From assembly GCF_001194135.2 (NCBI RefSeq), contig NC_068987.1, positions 16,106,194 to 16,170,193 on the forward strand: DNA of 64,000 bases. Direction: 5' to 3'. This DNA comes from Octopus bimaculoides (taxonomy: Eukaryota). The first letter of the stretch is position 1. Every line of letters starts with the position of its first letter. Positions 6,466 to 64,000 of this stretch are shown here, piece after piece. Both the position numbers and the translations under genes were made by a program. Below the pieces are notes generated by a model that was not told where the DNA came from, searched no databases, and worked only from the letters and a program-made list of their open reading frames with translations.

Positions 6466-6685
6466 NNNNNNNNNNNNNNNNNNNNNNNNNNNNNNNNNNN
6501 NNNNNNNNNNNNNNNNNNNNNNNNNNNNNNNNNNNNNNNNNNNNNNNNNNNNNNNNNNNNNNNNNNNNNNNNNNNNNNNNNNNNNNNNNNNNNNNNNNNN
6601 NNNNNNNNNNNNNNNNNNNNNNNNNNNNNNNNNNNNNNNNNNNNNNNNNNNNNNNNNNNNNNNNNNNNNNNNNNNNNNNNNNTCT

Positions 6686-7055
6686 GCAGGAGTGGCTGTG
6701 TGGTAAGTAGCTTGCTTATCAACCACATGGTTCCGGGCTCATTCCCACTGCGTGACACCTTGGGCAAGTGTCTTGCACTATAGCCTTGGGCTGACAAAAG
6801 CCTTGTGAGTGGATTTGGTAGACGGAAACTGAAAGAAGCCCGTCGTATATATATACGTATATATATATATATGTATGTGTGTGTGTTTGAGTGTCTGTGT
6901 TTGTCCCCCCAACATCGCTTGACAACCGATGGTGGTGTGTTTACGTCCCCGTAACCTAGCGGTTCGGCAAAAGAGACCGATAGAATAAGTACTAGGCTTC
7001 CAAAGAATAAGTCCTGGGGGGCGATTTTCTTGACTAAAGGCGGTGCTCCAGCATG
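6686..7055 (+). mobile_element. F1 SINE, young copy
   Basis: Well-preserved head, internal (TA)/(TG) microsatellite, CpGs retained; 3' end truncated at gctccagcatg. Confidence 0.9.
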
Positions 7056-7321
7056 AGCTTGTACGAGGCATGCTACCCTTTTTAACCCAGAGTACCAGTA
7101 GAATCCTTTGAAGAGAAACAAGATCGTAATGATCAGAGTCCAAAATCACGTGGTAAGGATATGTCTGTATACTTCATTTTATGAGTTCATCTCACCGTAG
7201 AAAGGTGCTTTTAGCTTGCTCACTCACATTCTGTCAATTTCATCAGGTTAGTGCTTCGTGGCTACTTGAGTCCTTTTTTCACTCTTATTTCCAGCAATTG
7301 CCGGTACTAATTTGTACCCTC

Positions 7322-8694: not shown

Positions 8695-9004
8695 CTGATA
8701 CAATATATGTAGATTTTCAAACATATTATGTTCCCTAGCAGACAGTCAGTACAAGGGAGATAATCATTTCTTCATAACATTTGGCAGGATCAGAAATTTG
8801 AATTTGAAATTAAGGAATGAGGAAGTAGATATGCAGAATACACATACATATGTATATATTTTTTTTGCTTACTTATTATGAACGTCTTAAAATCCATAGT
8901 CTTAGATAATTATGTGTAGCACCATTTCATTCTTTTTAGAAATCATCAGTGTGACATAACTGTGACATAAATTAAACATTATGATGCATGACATTTCTTA
9001 TAGA

Positions 9005-9049
<45 letters not shown>

Positions 9050-12774: not shown

Positions 12775-12935
12775 TGTATGTGGCTGTGTGGTAAGAAGCT
12801 CACTTCCCAACCATATAGTTCCAGGTTCAGTCCTACTGCATGGCACCTTGGGCAAGTGTCTTCTACTATAGCCTCAGCCCGACCAAAGCCTCGTGAATGA
12901 ATTTAGTAGACAGAAACTGAAAGAAGCCCGTTGTA
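12775..12935 (+). mobile_element. F1 SINE 5' half
   Basis: gtggctgtgtggtaagaagctc...gaaactgaaagaagcccg. Confidence 0.8.
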
Positions 12936-13345
12936 TATATATATGTGTATGTATGTATGAATGAACTCTGGCTGAAATACGATTGATATAAAATAAAGCT
13001 GAAGCAAATGAACACCCAATATATAGTGCGTGTGTTTTCATTGGCTAAACTGACAACATGATTGTCCACAAATACAACAATATATGTTTCAACACACGAA
13101 TTCACATCAAGAATCTTGCAAAACGAATATATAAATTCATATACATACATACATACATACAAAGGTTGCAAGACGCAGCAAAAACTTTAGGAAAATAAAA
13201 ATAAGGAATAAGTGAAAATTTTACCGGGGAGTATGTTAAATTACAAGGCACAAAAAGAAAATGACTCTCCCCAGACACACCAGAATATGCTTCAACACAC
13301 GAACTCACATAAAGAATCTTGCAAACCAAATCCCANNNNNNNNNN

Positions 13346-13706: not shown

Positions 13707-14564
13707 TATTAATGGTGTGTGGTGCATGTGTGTGTGTGTGTGTGTGTGCATGTGTATATCTATTAGTCGCAGTGATGGTGGAGATGGGAGGTGAAAGTGG
13801 AAGGAGTAGGACAGAAAAATAAGTAAACATCTGCCTCCAGTATTCTAAAGTAAACAACTGTGGTGTACTTTGCGTTGGGGAGTGGTGGTGGTGGTGGTGG
13901 TGGTGGGGGTAATGGTAGAATGGGTTTGCACTGAAATGGGAACGTTTAATGCTGGTGGTGGTGGTGGTGGTGATGGCGATGCTGTTGTAGTTGTTGTTGT
14001 TGGTGGTGGTGGTGGGGCTGAGGAAATGAGAGGGTATCATAATAGGGATGNNNNNNNNNNNNNNNNNNNNNNNNNNNNNNNNNNNNNNNNNNNNNNNNNN
14101 NNNNNNNNNNNNNNNNNNNNNNNNNNNNNNNNNNNNNNNNNNNNNNNNNNNNNNNNNNNNNNNNNNNNNNNNNNNNNNNNNNNNNNNNNNNNNNNNNNNN
14201 NNNNNNNNNNNNNNNNNNNNNNNNNNNNNNNNNNNNNNNNNNNNNNNNNNNNNNNNNNNNNNNNNNNNNNNNNNNNNNNNNNNNNNNNNNNNNNNNNNNN
14301 NNNNNNNNNNNNNNNNNNNNNNNNNNNNNNNNNNNNNNNNNNNNNNNNNNNNNNNNNNNNNNNNNNNNNNNNNNNNNNNNNNNNNNNNNNNNNNNNNNNN
14401 NNNNNNNNNNNNNNNNNNNNNNNNNNNNNNNNNNNNNNNNNNNNNNNNNNNNNNNNNNNNNNNNNNNNNNNNNNNNNNNNNNNNNNNNNNNNNNNNNNNN
14501 NNNNNNNNNNNNNNNNNNNNNNNNNNNNNNNNNNNNNNNNNNNNNNNNNNNNNNNNNNNNNNNN

Positions 14565-19969: not shown

Positions 19970-20113
19970 GTCGTCGTCGTTTAATGTCCGCATTCCATGC
20001 TAGCATGGGTTGGACGATTTGACTGAGGACTGGTGAAACCAGATGGCTACACCAGGCTCCAATCTGATTTGGCAGAGTTTCTACAGCTGGATGCCCTTCC
20101 TAACGCCAACCAC
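19970..20113 (-). mobile_element. RTE 3'UTR end (F2)
   Basis: Near-identical to 21157-21300. Confidence 0.85.
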
Positions 20114-20644: not shown

Positions 20645-21124
20645 NNNNNNNNNNNNNNNNNNNNNNNNNNNNNNNNNNNNNNNNNNNNNNNNNNNNNNNN
20701 NNNNNNNNNNNNNNNNNNNNNNNNNNNNNNNNNNNNNNNNNNNNNNNNNNNNNNNNNNNNNNNNNNNNNNNNNNNNNNNNNNNNNNNNNNNNNNNNNNNN
20801 NNNNNNNNNNNNNNNNNNNNNNNNNNNNNNNNNNNNNNNNNNNNNNNNNNNNNNNNNNNNNNNNNNNNNNNNNNNNNNNNNNNNNNNNNNNNNNNNNNNN
20901 NNNNNNNNNNNNNNNNNNNNNNNNNNNNNNNNNNNNNNNNNNNNNNNNNNNNNNNNNNNNNNNNNNNNNNNNNNNNNNNNNNNNNNNNNNNNNNNNNNNN
21001 NNNNNNNNNNNNNNNNNNNNNNNNNNNNNNNNNNNNNNNNNNNNNNNNNNNNNNNNNNNNNNNNNNNNNNNNNNNNNNNNNNNNNNNNNNNNNNNNNNNN
21101 NNNNNNNNNNNNNNNNNNNNNNNN

Positions 21125-21156
<32 letters not shown>

Positions 21157-21159
<3 letters not shown>

Positions 21160-21300
21160 TCATCATCATCATCATCGTTTAACGTCCGCTTTACATGCTA
21201 GCATGGGTTGGACGATTTGACTGAGGACTGGTGAAACCGGATGGCAACACCAAGCTCCAATCTAATTTGGCAGAGTTTCTACAGCTGGATGCCCTTCCTA
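21157..21300 (-). mobile_element. RTE 3'UTR end (F2)
   Basis: (ATC)n tail and F2 core. Confidence 0.85.
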
Positions 21301-21469
21301 TATATATATATGTATATATATAATTAATAATTAAGGGTGCTACAAGCAGCACCAGCATGCTAAAAATAGCAGCCAGAAGACGACGACAACCACAAATTTT
21401 CACTGATGCACATTGATTGCATAGCACTTGATATTAGTGTAAACAATAATATACTTATATATATGTATA

Positions 21470-21675
21470 TCATCATCATCATCGTTTAACGTCCACTTTC
21501 CATGCTAGCATGGGTTGGATGATTTGACTGAGGACTAGCAAGCCAGAAGGCTGCACCAGGCTCCAATCTGATCTGGCAGAATTTCTACAGCTGGATGCCC
21601 TTCCTAACGCCAACCACTCTGAGAGTGTAGTGGGTGCTTTTATGTTCCACCAGCACGAGGGCCAGTCACACGGTA
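21470..21675 (-). mobile_element. RTE 3'UTR end (F2)
   Basis: (ATC)n tail, F2 core, start of array unit. Confidence 0.85.
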
Positions 21676-21853
21676 CTATATATATATATATATAACAGGT
21701 AATGTTAATCACCACATCAAAGCGGCTGTTCCATGTTACTACTAGTTTAACCCCAGGCAGATCTTCCGCCATCTGGTTATCAGTGCAGTGCTGCACCCTA
21801 TATATTGCTAGTAGGGAGAGCAAATCTCTATTATCCTCTAGCAGACAACAGGA

Positions 21854-21902
21854 TCATGAGACTGATTCAGTTTCAAGGTGGTTGGTTCATCCTCAGTCGT
21901 GA
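21854..21902 (-). ncRNA. Type I hammerhead ribozyme motif (C3-G8), helix II decayed
   Basis: tcacga CTGAGGA t gaac caacca cctt GAAA ctgaatcag TC tcatga; GUC site; palindromic helix III actga-a-tcagt. Confidence 0.7.
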
Positions 21903-22100
21903 GCACCTGGCTACCAGAGCGATATCCAGGATCTGCTCCAGCCAGCATTATATTGTGAACAAAGAGACCATCAGTCACTGATTTGCAACAAGCAAAATAG
22001 CTATTTGTAAAATCTCAAGAAAAGATCAGAGTAATAACTATACTAATGAGTAAAGCTAATTGCCACATCAAAGTGGCTGTTCCATGTTACTATTAGATGT

Positions 22101-35819: not shown

Positions 35820-36150
35820 CCAGGCGTGGCTGTGTGGTTAAGAAGCTTGCTTCCCAGTCTTGTCGCTATGAGTTCAGTCCCACCGCTTGGCATTTTGGGC
35901 AAATGTCTTCAATTATAGCGCTTTGCCGACCAAGGCCTTGTGACTGGATTTCGTGTGTGCGCGCGTCTTTGTTTGTCCTTCACACTGCTTGACAACAGGT
36001 ATCAGTTTGTTTATATCCCCGTAAATTAGCAGTTCGACTAAAAAGACTGAAAGACAAAGTACCATGCTTTCAAAATATGCGTACTGAAGTCGATTTTTTG
36101 ACCAAATCCTTCAAGTTGTACCAGCATGGCTACAGTCTACTTATTGAAAC
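35820..36150 (+). mobile_element. F1 SINE
   Basis: Head and tail motifs. Confidence 0.8.
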
Positions 36151-36184
36151 AAATAAAACAATATATGTGTACATATATATATAT

Positions 36185-36550
36185 ATTCTTTTATTTGTTT
36201 GTCATTTGACTGCGGCCATGCTGGAGCACCGCCTTCAGTTGAACAGATTTACTCTTTGTAAGCCTAGTACTTATTCTATCGGTTTCTTTTGCAGAACCGC
36301 TAAGTTACAGGGACGTAAACACACCAACATTCGGTTGTCAAGCAGTGGTGGTGGGGGGAAACACAGACACACAAACGTATATATACCGCTGGCTTCTTTC
36401 AAGTTCTATCCACCAATTCCACTCACAAAGCTTTGGGTCATCCTGAGGCTATTGTAGAAGACACTTGCATAAGGTACTACGCAGTGGGACTGAACCCAGA
36501 ACCATGTGGCTGGTAAGCAAGCTACTTACCACACAGCCACTCCTGTGCCT
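36185..36550 (-). mobile_element. F1 SINE, young
   Basis: Near-consensus, CpGs retained. Confidence 0.85.
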
Positions 36551-49183: not shown

Positions 49184-49616
49184 TATANNNNNNNNNNNNN
49201 NNNNNNNNNNNNNNNNNNNNNNNNNNNNNNNNNNNNNNNNNNNNNNNNNNNNNNNNNNNNNNNNNNNNNNNNNNNNNNNNNNNNNNNNNNNNNNNNNNNN
49301 NNNNNNNNNNNNNNNNNNNNNNNNNNNNNNNNNNNNNNNNNNNNNNNNNNNNNNNNNNNNNNNNNNNNNNNNNNNNNNNNNNNNNNNNNNNNNNNNNNNN
49401 NNNNNNNNNNNNNNNNNNNNNNNNNNNNNNNNNNNNNNNNNNNNNNNNNNNNNNNNNNNNNNNNNNNNNNNNNNNNNNNNNNNNNNNNNNNNNNNNNNNN
49501 NNNNNNNNNNNNNNNNNNNNNNNNNNNNNNNNNNNNNNNNNNNNNNNNNNNNNNNNNNNNNNNNNNNNNNNNNNNNNNNNNNNNNNNNNNNNNNNNNNNN
49601 NNNNNNNNNNNNNNNN

Positions 49617-62031: not shown

Positions 62032-62243
62032 GGCGCATGCCTCAGTGGTTAGGGTATTCGGCTCACGGTCGTAAGGTCAGGAGTTCAATCCCTGGCAACA
62101 TGTGTCCTTGAACAGGACACTTTATTTCATGTTGCTCCAGTCCACTCAGCTGCCAAAATGATTAGTACTTGTATTTCAAAAGGGCCAGCCTTCTCACATT
62201 GTGTGTCACGTTGAATCTCCCTGAGAACTATGTTAAGGGTACT
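62032..62243 (+). mobile_element. F3 SINE, 3'-truncated by an F1 insertion
   Basis: ggcgcatgcctcagtggttagggtattcggctcacgg...gagttcaatccc head. Confidence 0.8.
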
Positions 62244-62694
62244 TTTTGCTGAACTGGTAAGTTGTGGGGAATACACACACACAAACTGCAGGCTTTTTTT
62301 AGTTTCTGTCAACCGAATCCACTCACAGCACTTTGGTCAGCTTGAAGCGATAGTGAACGACCCTTACCCAAGGTATCGCATATCAGCAATGATCCCGGGA
62401 CCATGCAGTTGGGAAGTAAACTTCTTACTACACAGCCACATGATTTATGTTCTTAAATAAATGTGTATGTACATATGCGTATGTATGTGTGTGTATATGT
62501 GTGTATGCATGTGCATATATTGCTGGCACTCCATTGATTATGATGATGAGGGTATTTGTATGTGTATGCACGTGTGTGTGTGCGTGTGCGTGTGTGCGTG
62601 CGTGCGCGTGCGTGTGCGCGTGCGCGTGTGTGCGTGTGTGCGTGCGTGCGTGCGTGTGCGCGGCAAGCATCTCCAACTAGCAGGCCATTGCTAC

Positions 62695-62737
62695 TCCAGA
62701 CTGATTACGGGCAAAGACTCAGAAACATGTCTCTGGA
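62695..62737 (+). ncRNA. Type I hammerhead ribozyme motif, copy 1 (G8U)
   Basis: tccaga CTGATTA cggg caaaga ctca GAAA catg TC tctgga; palindromic helix III ACATGT; GUC site. Confidence 0.75.
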
Positions 62738-63037
62738 TACAGGCTTAGCTAAGTGGGGATGCTTGTCTCCCACTTGTAAACAAGGACACAGGTGTCAAGG
62801 CTGACAGGAAGCGGTGCTGCTTCCTAGGGCTAAATAACAGTAGCATTATTTCCTTCATGGGACTGTCACATTAAATTGACAGCATACAACTACTTTGTCG
62901 CATCACTGCTGCATAAATCTCTCTGAGAAATTTAGAAATGTATTATTTCTATTTTTGAAATCAGTGAATGTGTTTCACTAGAATTATTATGTTTATGAGA
63001 GCTTGACAGGCATCTGCAACTAGCAGGCCATTGCTAC

Positions 63038-63080
63038 TCCAGACTGATGACAAGCATAGACTCAGAAAAATGTCTCTGGA
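63038..63080 (+). ncRNA. Type I hammerhead ribozyme motif, copy 2 (intact core, helix III mutated)
   Basis: tccaga CTGATGA caag cataga ctca GAAA aatg TC tctgga. Confidence 0.75.
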
Positions 63081-64000
63081 TGCAGGCTTAGCTAAGTGGG
63101 GATGCTTGTCTCCCCCTTGCAAACATAAAGACACAGGAAATGTGTCAAGGCTGACAGGAAGTGGTGCTGCTTCCTAGAGCTAAATAGCAGTAGTATTATT
63201 CCCATCATGGGACTGTCACATTAAGTTGACAGCATACTACTTTATATATANNNNNNNNNNNNNNNNNNNNNNNNNNNNNNNNNNNNNNNNNNNNNNNNNN
63301 NNNNNNNNNNNNNNNNNNNNNNNNNNNNNNNTATATATATATATATTTATATAAAATCTACTGTGACTCTCTCATTCCCAGGATACCATAGAAATTCACA
63401 TTGATTTGTCTATCACATTCCTCACAGTCTACTCCACAAAATTATAACTACAAGAACAGTCTCGTCCTTCCTATTTTCCATTTCTCTCTTCTTCCTGGCA
63501 ATACAATTTGTCAAGATTTTCAGTGAAACCCCTATGACTTCTAATTGTAAGTGAATTCGTGTATGTAGTGTGCACGCATGTGTGTGTGTAGGTGGTTGAA
63601 TAAAGTTGCATAGTGTATCGTTGTGTTTACAGGTGTGAGGGTTGTGCGGTGTCTGTGTTGTGGAGGTATGATCTCTGTTCAGTTTCACTAAATTTCTTCA
63701 TGCTAGTTAGATAGACAAACAAACAACATATGTATAAGGGTGAGATTGTGTATCAAATTAGTTAATGTCAGTGCCATACTAATGTTGTACTGTAGAATGA
63801 TATATAAGATGCAGGATAGCAGGTGGTGGAATTGGTTAGCAGCCAAATTAAACACATGTGGTATTGAGTTAAATCTTGAGGTCAATTTCTGCTAGGGGTT
63901 GACTTCCCTTTCATCCCGGTAGGGTACAGTCATACACTTGGAGCTGATTCAATTGAAAATATCTCTCTGGGTCTGTACTGAAACTCTTCTCTTCCTGTCA

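What the first reader, a model, noticed from the sequence alone, without database searches (positions are those of the whole stretch)
62667..63243. Tandem 343-nt hammerhead repeat: a probable non-LTR retrozyme family (R1)
Seen: two direct copies 343 nt apart, each reading helix I (tccaga/tctgga), CUGAUGA core, helix II, GAAA, short helix III and a GUC site. Predicted cleavage is after 62731 and 63074, giving a 343-nt monomer. Helix I extends through an internal loop (aggcc/ggctt, then tagc/gcta), and the rest of the monomer is a chain of hairpins (aagtggg/cccactt, aggaagc/gcttcct, ctgtca/tgacag). The copies carry different lesions (copy 1 G8U; copy 2 a broken ACAUGU palindrome), and helix II fits CpG decay from CGAG/CTCG, so the consensus rebuilds a complete ribozyme. 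Established: 170-400-nt tandem repeats with type I hammerheads that yield circular RNAs are known as non-LTR retrozymes in other metazoans, and minimal palindromic helix III motifs cleave as dimers. Inference: this is a decayed member of an octopus retrozyme family. I cannot tell whether it has been described.
Basis: partly seen in the sequence, partly recalled or inferred. Interest (0 to 1): 0.9.

Follow-up and report, generated by a model that had tools for sequence, protein, structure and literature searches.

The report
Decayed octopus hammerhead retrozyme repeat
A 580-base stretch holds 1.7 tandem copies of a 343-base non-coding repeat that carries a mutated self-cleaving hammerhead ribozyme: most likely a dead copy of a "retrozyme" mobile element, a kind already known from corals, mussels and salamanders, so it is a real but expected find.

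Summary
Two direct copies lie 343 nt apart (62664-63243, about 89% identical). Each carries a type I hammerhead layout in the same register, with predicted cleavage after 62731 and 63074.

Rfam's own models give no hit. A covariance model I built only from three published, experimentally cleaving retrozyme hammerheads (coral, mussel, axolotl) ranks copy 1 first (18.5 bits, E about 0.005) and copy 2 third in the 64-kb window. A descriptor scan found no such motif in 300 simulated windows.

The GAAA-CAUG-UC helix III and cleavage site of copy 1 match axolotl HHR_Amex1 exactly. That ribozyme cleaves efficiently only as a dimer.

Size (343 nt), GC (41%), absence of coding capacity and a self-paired fold (z about -3) all fit non-LTR retrozymes.

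Both copies look dead. Copy 1 has G8U; copy 2 has a two-pair helix II and a broken palindrome. The ribozyme has diverged as fast as the rest of the unit.

I could not test whether a genomic family exists, because no octopus genome was searchable.

Verdict: a new, decayed member of a known kind, of modest interest.

The parts
62664..63243 (+). Whole array: about 1.69 tandem units of a 343-nt non-coding repeat
   Evidence: Direct-repeat families D3 and D4, alignment A1, blastn self-hit at 88.9% over 235 columns.
62664..63006 (+). Unit 1 (complete, 343 nt, GC 40.8%). It includes the AT-rich part 62896-63006, which is seen only in this unit.
63007..63243 (+). Unit 2 (partial, 237 nt), truncated at (TA)n and the assembly gap
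62695..62737 (+). Hammerhead copy 1. Helix I 62695-62700 pairs with 62732-62737. Core CUGAUUA 62701-62707 (G8U at 62706). Helix II module 62708-62721 (C.A, G-C, G-U, G-C; loop CAAAGA). GAAA 62722-62725. CAUG 62726-62729. U16.1 62730. C17 62731, with predicted cleavage between 62731 and 62732.
   Evidence: Sequence; descriptor hit; model R1 top hit in the window, 62692-62740, 18.5 bits, E about 0.005.
63038..63080 (+). Hammerhead copy 2. Intact core CUGAUGA 63044-63050. Helix II module 63051-63064 with only 2 of 4 pairs. GAAA 63065-63068. C15.2 changed to A at 63069, which breaks the ACAUGU palindrome. C17 63074, with predicted cleavage between 63074 and 63075.
   Evidence: Sequence; descriptor hit with exact core; model R1 hit 63035-63083, 14.8 bits, E about 0.06.
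62678..62694 (+). Distal helix I 5' strand (TAGC-AGGCC 62678-62686) plus the 5' side of internal loop 1 (AUUGCUAC 62687-62694). The UAC sits at positions 2.7-2.9, the same offset as in the Schistosoma-derived N79 ribozyme.
   Evidence: Sequence; fold of the domain; comparison with the N79 sequence printed in PMC12550524.
62738..62751 (+). The 3' side of loop 1 (UACA) and the distal helix I 3' strand (GGCUU-A-GCUA)
62732..63074 (+). Predicted cleavage-to-cleavage 343-nt RNA monomer, with its ends joined by extended helix I. Linear MFE -100.4 kcal/mol (z -3.0); circular MFE -94.7 kcal/mol (z -2.8); 61% of bases paired.
62450..62660 (.). Left flank: (GT)n/(GTGC)n microsatellite that abuts the start of the array
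   Evidence: Tandem Repeats Finder rows; sequence.
63244..63353 (.). Right flank: (TA)n microsatellite that contains the N gap 63251-63331

Best explanation
This is a dead genomic copy of a metazoan non-LTR retrozyme, about 1.7 units long. A retrozyme is a short, non-coding, tandemly repeated retroelement whose RNA carries a type I hammerhead ribozyme.

In a live element the steps would be as follows (all inferred from the family, PMC7229834 and PMC7761336):
1. The + strand is transcribed as a multimer.
2. Each hammerhead cuts after its GUC, here after 62731 and 63074. Helix III is only A15.1-U16.1 capped by the palindromic CAUG, so two neighbouring ribozymes would pair their ACAUGU stretches and cut as a dimer, as shown for axolotl HHR_Amex1.
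3. The 343-nt monomer, with a 5'-OH and a 2',3'-cyclic phosphate, has its ends held together by the long helix I and is circularised by a host tRNA ligase.
4. A reverse transcriptase supplied in trans, probably from a Penelope-like element, copies the circle for more than one turn.
5. The longer-than-unit cDNA integrates. Here it sits between a (GTGC)n and a (TA)n microsatellite.

Shown here: the repeat, the ribozyme layout and its similarity to validated retrozyme ribozymes, the fold, the lack of coding capacity, and the lesions.

Inferred: transcription, cleavage, circularisation and mobilisation in the ancestor, and the present inactivity of this locus.
For: 1. Repeat: two units 343 nt apart, about 89% identical.
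2. Independent model: R1 was built only from the coral Amil224, mussel Mg353 and axolotl Ax353 ribozymes printed in the PMC7229834 supplement. It ranks copy 1 first (18.5 bits, E about 0.005) and copy 2 third (14.8 bits, E about 0.06) in 128 kb of searched strand. Both hits are full length and in the expected register.
3. Simulation: no such motif in 300 simulated windows.
4. Match to the axolotl ribozyme: from the core to the cleavage site, copy 1 matches axolotl Ax330 at 22 of 31 positions without gaps. This includes the whole GAAACATGTC, the same 14-nt helix II module, and loop 2 CAAAGA against CAAAAA.
5. Match to the Schistosoma-derived ribozyme: N79 has loop 2 CAAATA, helix I ATCCAG/CTGGAT and a UAC at the same offset.
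6. Palindromic helix III: all four published retrozyme ribozymes have one, ACAGTACTGT, ACGCGCGT, ACACGTGT and ACATGT.
7. Family features: 343 nt lies within the 150-450 bp range. GC is 40.8%, below 45-50%. No open stretch longer than 70 aa exists, and there was no protein match in 5.8 billion sequences. No LTR, PBS or PPT layout is evident in the sequence. The fold is stable and self-paired with joined ends.
8. Length of more than one unit: this is what reverse transcription of a circle predicts (PMC7761336).
9. Host: an octopod. Cephalopod genomes hold Penelope-like elements, and the giant squid genome holds Hammerhead_1 loci (PMC8557442, PMC6962438).
10. Decay: 6 of 49 ribozyme positions differ between the copies, against 19 of 181 elsewhere, so the ribozyme is under no detectable constraint. 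CpG is nearly gone.
Against: - Rfam's curated hammerhead models give no hit at gathering score, nor at E<=10 on 761 nt.
- Model R1 skips helix II in both copies. Helix II is weak: its base pair 10.1-11.1 is C.A in both copies.
- MFE folds of the present copies form helix I but not the canonical helix II.
- There are only 1.7 units and no other copy in 64 kb.
- No family member was found anywhere I could search. Those collections hold almost no octopus DNA, so this null result is weak.
- No Penelope-like ORF is present in the window.
- E-values from R1 are rough: the calibration is short and the model rests on three sequences.
Confidence: 0.75

Rival explanations
1. The repeat is a remnant of the pseudo-LTR region of an autonomous Penelope-like element (PLE), not a separate non-autonomous retrozyme. 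PLE insertions form partial tandems whose pLTRs carry type I hammerheads.
For: - PLE pLTRs carry type I hammerheads that act as dimers, and PLEs prefer to insert into microsatellites, (TA)n included (PMC8557442; PMC7761336). This array sits between (GTGC)n and (TA)n.
- A 2026 preprint finds vertebrate retrozymes nested among PLE pLTRs (10.64898/2026.07.22.740005). The two readings therefore overlap.
Against: - No RT or GIY-YIG-like ORF, nor any long ORF, lies anywhere in the window.
- The period is 343 nt, not the 3-4 kb of a PLE body.
- PLE ribozymes are described as minimal variants without helix III or loop-loop contacts. This motif has a 4-position helix II with a 6-nt loop like CAAAUA, and an internal loop 1 with UAC at the canonical offset.
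Confidence: 0.12
2. The hammerhead resemblance is a coincidence inside an ordinary local tandem duplication. No ribozyme was ever encoded here.
For: - Rfam finds nothing.
- Helix II is not properly paired in either copy.
- A relaxed descriptor that allows G-U pairs and any spacing finds other loci in the window.
- Model R1 gives other hits of 14-15 bits in the window.
- The two copies are not independent observations.
Against: - The top-ranked R1 hit in the window lies exactly in the tandem unit.
- Scaled to the 580-nt array, E is about 5e-5 (arithmetic).
- There were 0 hits in 300 simulated windows.
- Non-core details match validated ribozymes: helix III and the cleavage site are identical to Ax330, the module lengths are the same, loop 2 is similar, and UAC sits at the same offset.
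- The unit ends are joined by a helix I that extends well past the motif.
Confidence: 0.08
3. The locus is still functional. Transcripts from it cleave, with copy 2 acting alone or paired with copy 1, and yield a circular RNA.
For: - Copy 2 keeps the full CUGAUGA...GAAA...GUC core and a perfect 6-bp helix I.
- A copy 1/copy 2 intermolecular helix III would still form 5 of 6 pairs (read from the sequence).
- Axolotl HHR_Amex2 works despite a mismatch at the base of helix II.
Against: - Copy 1 has U at G8, a catalytically essential base (own knowledge of hammerhead mutagenesis), so at most one cut is possible and no monomer can be released.
- Copy 2's helix II has only 2 pairs.
- The ribozyme has diverged at the same rate as the rest of the unit.
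- Unit 2 is truncated.
Confidence: 0.05

Closest known systems
Metazoan non-LTR retrozymes (Cervera and de la Pena 2020, PMC7229834), in particular the axolotl Rtz331 repeat carrying HHR_Amex1 (construct Ax330)
   Same: - Tandem, non-coding, low-GC unit of about 330-350 nt.
- Type I hammerhead with a 6-bp proximal helix I and a 14-nt helix II module with a CAAAnA loop.
- Identical GAAA-CAUG-UC: a one-pair helix III capped by a palindromic tetraloop that forces dimeric cleavage.
- Predicted self-paired monomer.
   Different: - No sequence similarity outside the ribozyme.
- The base of helix II is C.A rather than G-C.
- Only 1.7 units here, against arrays of many units.
- Both ribozymes are mutated.
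- Expression and circularity are untested.
Mussel (Mytilus galloprovincialis) retrozyme Mg353, the only mollusc retrozyme characterised in the papers read
   Same: Same phylum, similar unit size (353 nt), a type I hammerhead in a tandem AT-rich repeat, and a palindromic helix III (ACGCGCGT).
   Different: - The mussel ribozyme has a more stable helix III and cleaves well as a monomer.
- Its helix II module is 13 nt.
- The mussel ribozyme lacks most of the canonical loop 1 and loop 2 nucleotides, whereas the octopus motif resembles the Schistosoma-derived N79 and axolotl Ax330 in loop 2 and N79 in loop 1.
- No shared sequence was seen outside the ribozyme when comparing by eye with the printed construct. 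This comparison was not aligned formally.
Schistosoma mansoni Sm-alpha hammerhead (engineered N79 variant, sequence in PMC12550524)
   Same: Helix I ATCCAG/CTGGAT against TCCAGA/TCTGGA. UAC at positions 2.7-2.9. A 4+6+4 helix II module with loop CAAAUA against CAAAGA. A GUC cleavage site.
   Different: N79 has a long (engineered) helix III and a G-C pair at 10.1-11.1. The octopus motif has one extra A-U pair next to the core.
Minimal hammerheads of Penelope-like elements and Terminons
   Same: Type I topology, a near-absent helix III, dimeric action, tandem context and association with microsatellite targets.
   Different: They lie in pLTRs next to an RT/GIY-YIG reading frame and lack loop-loop elements. 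Here no reading frame is nearby, and loops 1 and 2 look canonical.

Membership tests
Hammerhead ribozyme, type I | Conserved core CUGANGA ... GAAA ... UH around a three-way junction, with helix I open | tested here: met
   Copy 2 has CUGAUGA, GAAA and GUC in the right order and spacing. Copy 1 has the same apart from G8U at 62706. Met for copy 2; copy 1 has one lesion.
Hammerhead ribozyme, type I | Helix I pairs the sequence just 5' of the core with the sequence just 3' of the cleavage site | tested here: met
   Six Watson-Crick pairs in both copies, extended by 5+4 further pairs beyond an internal loop.
Hammerhead ribozyme, type I | Paired helix II closing on positions 10.1-11.1 | tested here: not met
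   Positions 10.1-11.1 are C.A in both copies. Copy 1 pairs 3 of 4 positions and copy 2 pairs 2 of 4. R1 skips the module and MFE folds do not form it. A mismatch at the base also occurs in the validated HHR_Amex2, so copy 1's helix II may be tolerable.
Hammerhead ribozyme, type I | Helix III, or a palindromic surrogate for dimers, with A15.1-U16.1 | tested here: met
   Copy 1's ACAUGU is identical to Ax330. Copy 2 has AAAUGU, which breaks the palindrome.
Hammerhead ribozyme, type I | Score at or above the Rfam gathering threshold for a hammerhead family | tested here: not met
   No hit at gathering score, nor at E<=10 over 62500-63260.
Hammerhead ribozyme, type I | Significant match to a model built from experimentally cleaving retrozyme hammerheads | tested here: met
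   R1 gives 18.5 bits (E about 0.005, rank 1) and 14.8 bits (E about 0.06, rank 3) in the window. The E-values are rough.
Hammerhead ribozyme, type I | Site-specific self-cleavage | not testable with these tools
   This needs in vitro transcription.
Metazoan non-LTR retrozyme | Head-to-tail repeats of 150-450 bp, dimers to multimers, each with a type I hammerhead | tested here: met
   343-nt period and 1.69 units, each with the motif.
Metazoan non-LTR retrozyme | Low GC (below 45-50%), no LTR, PBS or PPT, and no coding capacity | tested here: met
   GC is 40.8%. The longest stop-free stretch is 70 aa, and no protein match was found. No long terminal repeats flank the unit.
Metazoan non-LTR retrozyme | Monomer RNA predicted to be stable and highly self-paired, with the ribozyme split across its ends | tested here: met
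   Linear MFE -100.4 kcal/mol with z -3.0. Circular MFE -94.7 kcal/mol with z -2.8 and 61% of bases paired.
Metazoan non-LTR retrozyme | Multi-copy family dispersed in the genome | not testable with these tools
   No other copy in the window. No octopus genome can be searched by nucleotide. Indirect attempts returned nothing.
Metazoan non-LTR retrozyme | Expression as linear and circular RNA of unit length | not testable with these tools
   This needs RNA-seq, northern blots or RNase R treatment.
Metazoan non-LTR retrozyme | Co-occurrence with Penelope-like elements in the host genome | not tested
   Literature only: Octopus spp. carry PLE (Naiad) families and the giant squid genome has Penelope elements. 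No PLE ORF is in the window.
Penelope-like element pLTR hammerhead | Location in the pseudo-LTR of an element that encodes RT and a GIY-YIG endonuclease | tested here: not met
   No such reading frame or remnant was seen among ORFs of at least 90 aa or among stop-free stretches of at least 70 aa that lack N-derived residues and pass a complexity filter. Only 757 nt lie downstream before the window ends.

The most novel reading that the evidence does not exclude
Octopus genomes carry a live retrozyme family of about 343 nt whose hammerhead combines Schistosoma-like loops with the amphibian-type one-pair palindromic helix III. Cleavage would then depend on dimers, a mode the papers read report for amphibian retrozymes, while most invertebrate ones cleave as monomers. 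The base of helix II would be unusual, either a C.A mismatch or a reversed C-G pair. Intact copies elsewhere would yield abundant small circular RNAs in cephalopod tissues. Two further sub-threshold hammerhead-like motifs next to (TA)n in the same 64 kb hint that such elements may be dense in this genome.
Probability: 0.3. Interest if true: 0.45.

Novelty: new member of a known kind. Interest (0 to 1): 0.3.

Why it matters
If the family is confirmed genome-wide, it would add cephalopods to the animals with retrozyme-type circular RNAs.

It would also be an invertebrate example of the dimer-dependent helix III described for amphibians. That is useful for tracing how these ribozymes and their Penelope-like partners evolved.

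This locus by itself is a neutral fossil. It changes no current view, because hammerhead repeats are already known to be widespread in metazoans, molluscs included.

Tried and rejected
1. Rfam at gathering score and at E<=10 gave no hammerhead hit. The only hits were spurious miRNA, IRES and snoRNA matches on the (GTGC)n microsatellite.
2. Tandem Repeats Finder did not report the 343-nt period. The repeat finder and blastn did.
3. I looked for other copies in four ways:
   - blastn of the unit against the window found none.
   - A concatenated six-frame translation of the unit against 5.8 billion predicted proteins found none.
   - Pattern scans of JGI metagenomes and of IMG/VR found none.
   - Exact look-up of four window ORFs, to locate the source contig, found nothing on record.
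4. These null results say little, because the collections are not octopus genomes.
5. Including Ax330 and N79 in the training alignment failed. MAFFT misaligned helix III and the 14-nt helix II. I therefore used only the three sequences that aligned correctly, which also kept the closest relative, Ax330, out of the model.
6. I looked for a Penelope-like reading frame in the window and found none.
7. MFE and cofold of the present-day ribozyme domains form helix I. They do not form the canonical helix II or the intermolecular helix III as the best structure. That is uninformative for decayed copies.
8. I rejected assembly duplication as the origin, because the copies differ by 11% and a 7-nt indel.
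9. I found no evidence of a second ribozyme on the minus strand: there is only a 10-bit R1 hit with E about 1.5, and Rfam finds nothing.
Full report
**1. The observation**

The stretch 62664-63243 contains two direct copies of one sequence.
- The repeat finder gives 62664-62782 against 63007-63125 (92%, spacing 343) and 62792-62891 against 63142-63241 (92%, spacing 350).
- The shift between the two spacings comes from a 7-nt insertion in copy 2.
- blastn gives 88.9% identity over 235 columns and finds no third copy anywhere in the 64-kb window.
- Copy 1 starts directly after a (GT)n/(GTGC)n microsatellite (62450-62660). Copy 2 breaks off at 63243 against (TA)n, which contains the assembly gap 63251-63331.
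- The array is therefore about 1.69 units of 343 nt.
- The AT-rich last third of the unit (62896-63006) is seen only once.

- Helix I: TCCAGA/TCTGGA.
- Core: CTGATTA in copy 1 (G8U at 62706) and CTGATGA in copy 2.
- A 14-nt helix II module, then GAAA.
- CATGTC in copy 1 and AATGTC in copy 2, with C17 at 62731 and 63074.
- The distal helix I (TAGC-AGGCC pairing with GGCTT-A-GCTA).
- The three internal hairpins.

**2. Is it more than chance?**

Rfam release 15 gives no hammerhead hit at gathering score over the window. It gives none at E<=10 over 62500-63260 either. That is a real negative, and it needed an independent test.

The supplement of Cervera and de la Pena 2020 (PMC7229834) prints four retrozyme constructs that were transcribed and shown to cleave. 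I aligned the ribozyme domains of coral Amil224, mussel Mg353 and axolotl Ax353. I gave the alignment the canonical three-helix structure and built model R1. None of the window's sequence went into it.

With filters off over the whole window and both strands:
- Copy 1 is the best hit (62692-62740, 18.5 bits, E about 0.005).
- Copy 2 is third (63035-63083, 14.8 bits, E about 0.06).
- Both are full length and in the expected register.
- Helix II is skipped as a local end in both, so it adds nothing to the score.
- The calibration is short, so these E-values are good to within about a factor of five.
- Scaled to the 580-nt array, the expectation is about 5e-5.

A hand-written descriptor gave a separate check. 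It required a core with at most one mismatch, a 12-16 nt helix II module, GAAA, a 4-8 nt helix III, UH, and at least 6 Watson-Crick pairs in helix I. It found only these two sites in the window, and none in 300 first-order-Markov windows of the same composition. A looser descriptor, allowing G-U pairs and any spacing, does pick up unrelated loci. The specificity therefore comes from the spacing and from helix I.

**3. Resemblance beyond the core**

- From the first core base to the cleavage site, copy 1 aligns without gaps to axolotl Ax330 (HHR_Amex1) at 22 of 31 positions.
- The last ten positions, GAAACATGTC, are identical.
- The paper describes that helix III as a single base pair capped by a palindromic tetraloop. 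It reports weak cleavage by the monomer and efficient cleavage by dimeric constructs.
- All four printed retrozyme ribozymes have a palindromic helix III: ACAGTACTGT, ACGCGCGT, ACACGTGT and ACATGT.
- Loop 2 is CAAAGA (copy 1) or CATAGA (copy 2). Ax330 has CAAAAA, and the Schistosoma-derived N79 ribozyme has CAAATA (PMC12550524).
- N79 also has helix I ATCCAG/CTGGAT, against TCCAGA/TCTGGA here.
- Both carry UAC at positions 2.7-2.9 on the 5' side of the internal loop of helix I.

This looks like the canonical metazoan type I ribozyme with loop 1 and loop 2 elements. It does not look like the stripped-down variant described for Penelope-like elements.

**4. The unit as a whole**

- GC is 40.8%.
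- The longest stop-free stretch in any frame is 70 aa. A concatenated six-frame translation finds no protein among 5.8 billion.
- The cleavage-to-cleavage RNA 62732-63074 folds to -100.4 kcal/mol (z -3.0), with its ends joined through the extended helix I.
- As a circle it folds to -94.7 kcal/mol (z -2.8), with 61% of bases paired.
- The minus strand is about as structured (z -3.3), as expected for a mostly helical sequence. It has no ribozyme hit.

These are the listed features of metazoan non-LTR retrozymes. Those are tandem units of 150-450 bp with GC below 45-50%, no LTR, PBS or PPT, no coding capacity, a type I hammerhead and stable self-paired RNAs. An insertion longer than one unit is what reverse transcription of a circular template predicts.

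**5. State of the two ribozymes**

- Copy 1 has U in place of G8. From my own knowledge of hammerhead mutagenesis and structure, G8 is essential.
- Copy 2 has an intact core. However, its helix II keeps only A-U and G-C (positions 10.1-11.1 are C.A and 10.2-11.2 are A.C). It also has A in place of C15.2, which breaks the palindrome.
- Six of the 49 ribozyme positions differ between the copies, against 19 of 181 elsewhere. There is therefore no sign of constraint since the copies diverged.
- CpG is nearly gone. Copy 1 has two CpGs in the shared region, both TG or CA in copy 2, and copy 2 has none. Observed/expected is 0.21 and 0.0, against 0.49 for the window.
- Present-day folds form helix I but not the canonical helix II.

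I conclude that the locus is a fossil.

**6.

One of the needed changes (CG in copy 1, CA in copy 2 at 62708-62709) is a CpG-type difference that is actually seen. The G at 11.1 is in neither copy.

With two copies there is no consensus. Choosing the working base at each differing site is not evidence. The repair would also give C10.1-G11.1, the reverse of the usual G-C (own knowledge).

A simpler reading is available. Validated HHR_Amex2 has a U.U mismatch at the base of helix II above three pairs. Copy 1 has the same shape, C.A above G-C, G-U, G-C. Only a genome-wide consensus can decide between the two.

**7. Host and literature**

A SINE-derived peptide from 6781-7173(-) matches a hypothetical protein of Octopus vulgaris at 87% identity. 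The window therefore comes from an octopod.

In the searchable library, no paper describes an octopus hammerhead or retrozyme. Related facts exist:
- 235 Hammerhead_1 loci and Penelope elements in the giant squid genome.
- Penelope-like (Naiad) families in Octopus spp..
- A mussel retrozyme.
- A 2026 preprint that places vertebrate retrozymes among PLE pLTRs.

**8. Rival explanations**

- *PLE pLTR remnant.* This overlaps with the main reading, and the flanking microsatellites fit it. Against it: there is no reading frame in the window, the period is 343 nt, and the ribozyme is not of the minimal type.
- *Pure coincidence.* Sections 2 and 3 make this unlikely, but it is not excluded. The two copies are one observation, helix II is poor and Rfam is silent.
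- *A still-active locus.* G8U in copy 1 and the weak helix II in copy 2 make this unlikely.

**9. What I could not do**

It needs a nucleotide search of an octopus genome or transcriptome, and none of the available collections holds one. All indirect routes returned nothing, and these null results are weak.

**10. Verdict**

The element is a decayed new member of a known kind. Interest is modest (0.3), because the class, its mechanism and its wide metazoan distribution are already established.

Noticed in passing
window 21699-22096 (minus strand); hammerhead-like motif at 21851-21905(-): This is a second candidate hammerhead element, unrelated in sequence to the 343-nt unit. It reads UGCUCACGA-CUGAGGA-[15 nt]-GAAA-CUGAAUCAG-UC|UCAUGAUCC. 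The core is complete and helix I pairs 5 of 6 positions; the C.A mismatch fits CpG decay. Helix III is ACUGA-A-UCAGU and helix II is poor. R1 scores it 11.8 bits, and a more degenerate 14-bit hit lies at 21747-21792(-). The element has a 47-nt direct repeat at both ends, spaced 351 nt (about 1.13 units), and it abuts (TA)n at 21677-21695.
   Followed up: partly
window 8896-8958 (minus strand): This is a third hammerhead-like motif: GUCACA-CUGAUGA-UUUCUAAAAAGAAU-GAAA-...-AUC|UAAGAC. It has an exact core and a 14-nt helix II module with loop UAAAAA. Helix I pairs only 4 of 6 positions. R1 scores it 15.1 bits (E about 0.05). It also lies next to a (TA)n run, at about 9000-9045. It may be chance or another fossil.
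   Followed up: partly
window about 62040-62440: A tRNA-like SINE head lies just upstream of the microsatellite that precedes the array. It has box A/B-like sequence, gcctcagtggttagggtattcggctcacggtcgtaaggtcaggagttcaatccctgg. ARAGORN and Rfam call no tRNA there.
   Followed up: no
window 62500-62730: The (GT)n/(GTGC)n microsatellite produces spurious sub-threshold Rfam matches (mir-297, L-myc IRES, SCARNA2, sno_ZL1), all far below their gathering scores.
   Followed up: yes
window 6781-7173(-), 36077-36457(+), 12866-13171(-): A dispersed SINE-like repeat translates to ...KPSTYSIG(L/F)FCRTA(R/K)L(R/Q)GRKHT... One copy matches a 'Hypothetical predicted protein [Octopus vulgaris]' at 87% identity. 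This suggests that some annotated octopus proteins derive from repeats.
   Followed up: partly
window 19971-20102, 21138-21300, 21449-21606: Another repeat family recurs at least three times within 2 kb, next to (TA)n/(ATC)n runs. It reads ...gtttaacgtccgctttacatgctagcatgggttggacgatttgactgaggact....
   Followed up: no
window, ten N runs (e.g. 6466-6682, 14051-14564, 20645-21124, 49188-49616, 63251-63331): The sequence has ten N gaps (2124 N in total). Those whose flanks I read sit in microsatellites: (TA)n at 20645-21124 and 63251-63331, and (GT)n-coded runs beside 49188-49616. Microsatellite-flanked repeats such as this array may therefore be truncated or collapsed in the assembly.
   Followed up: no
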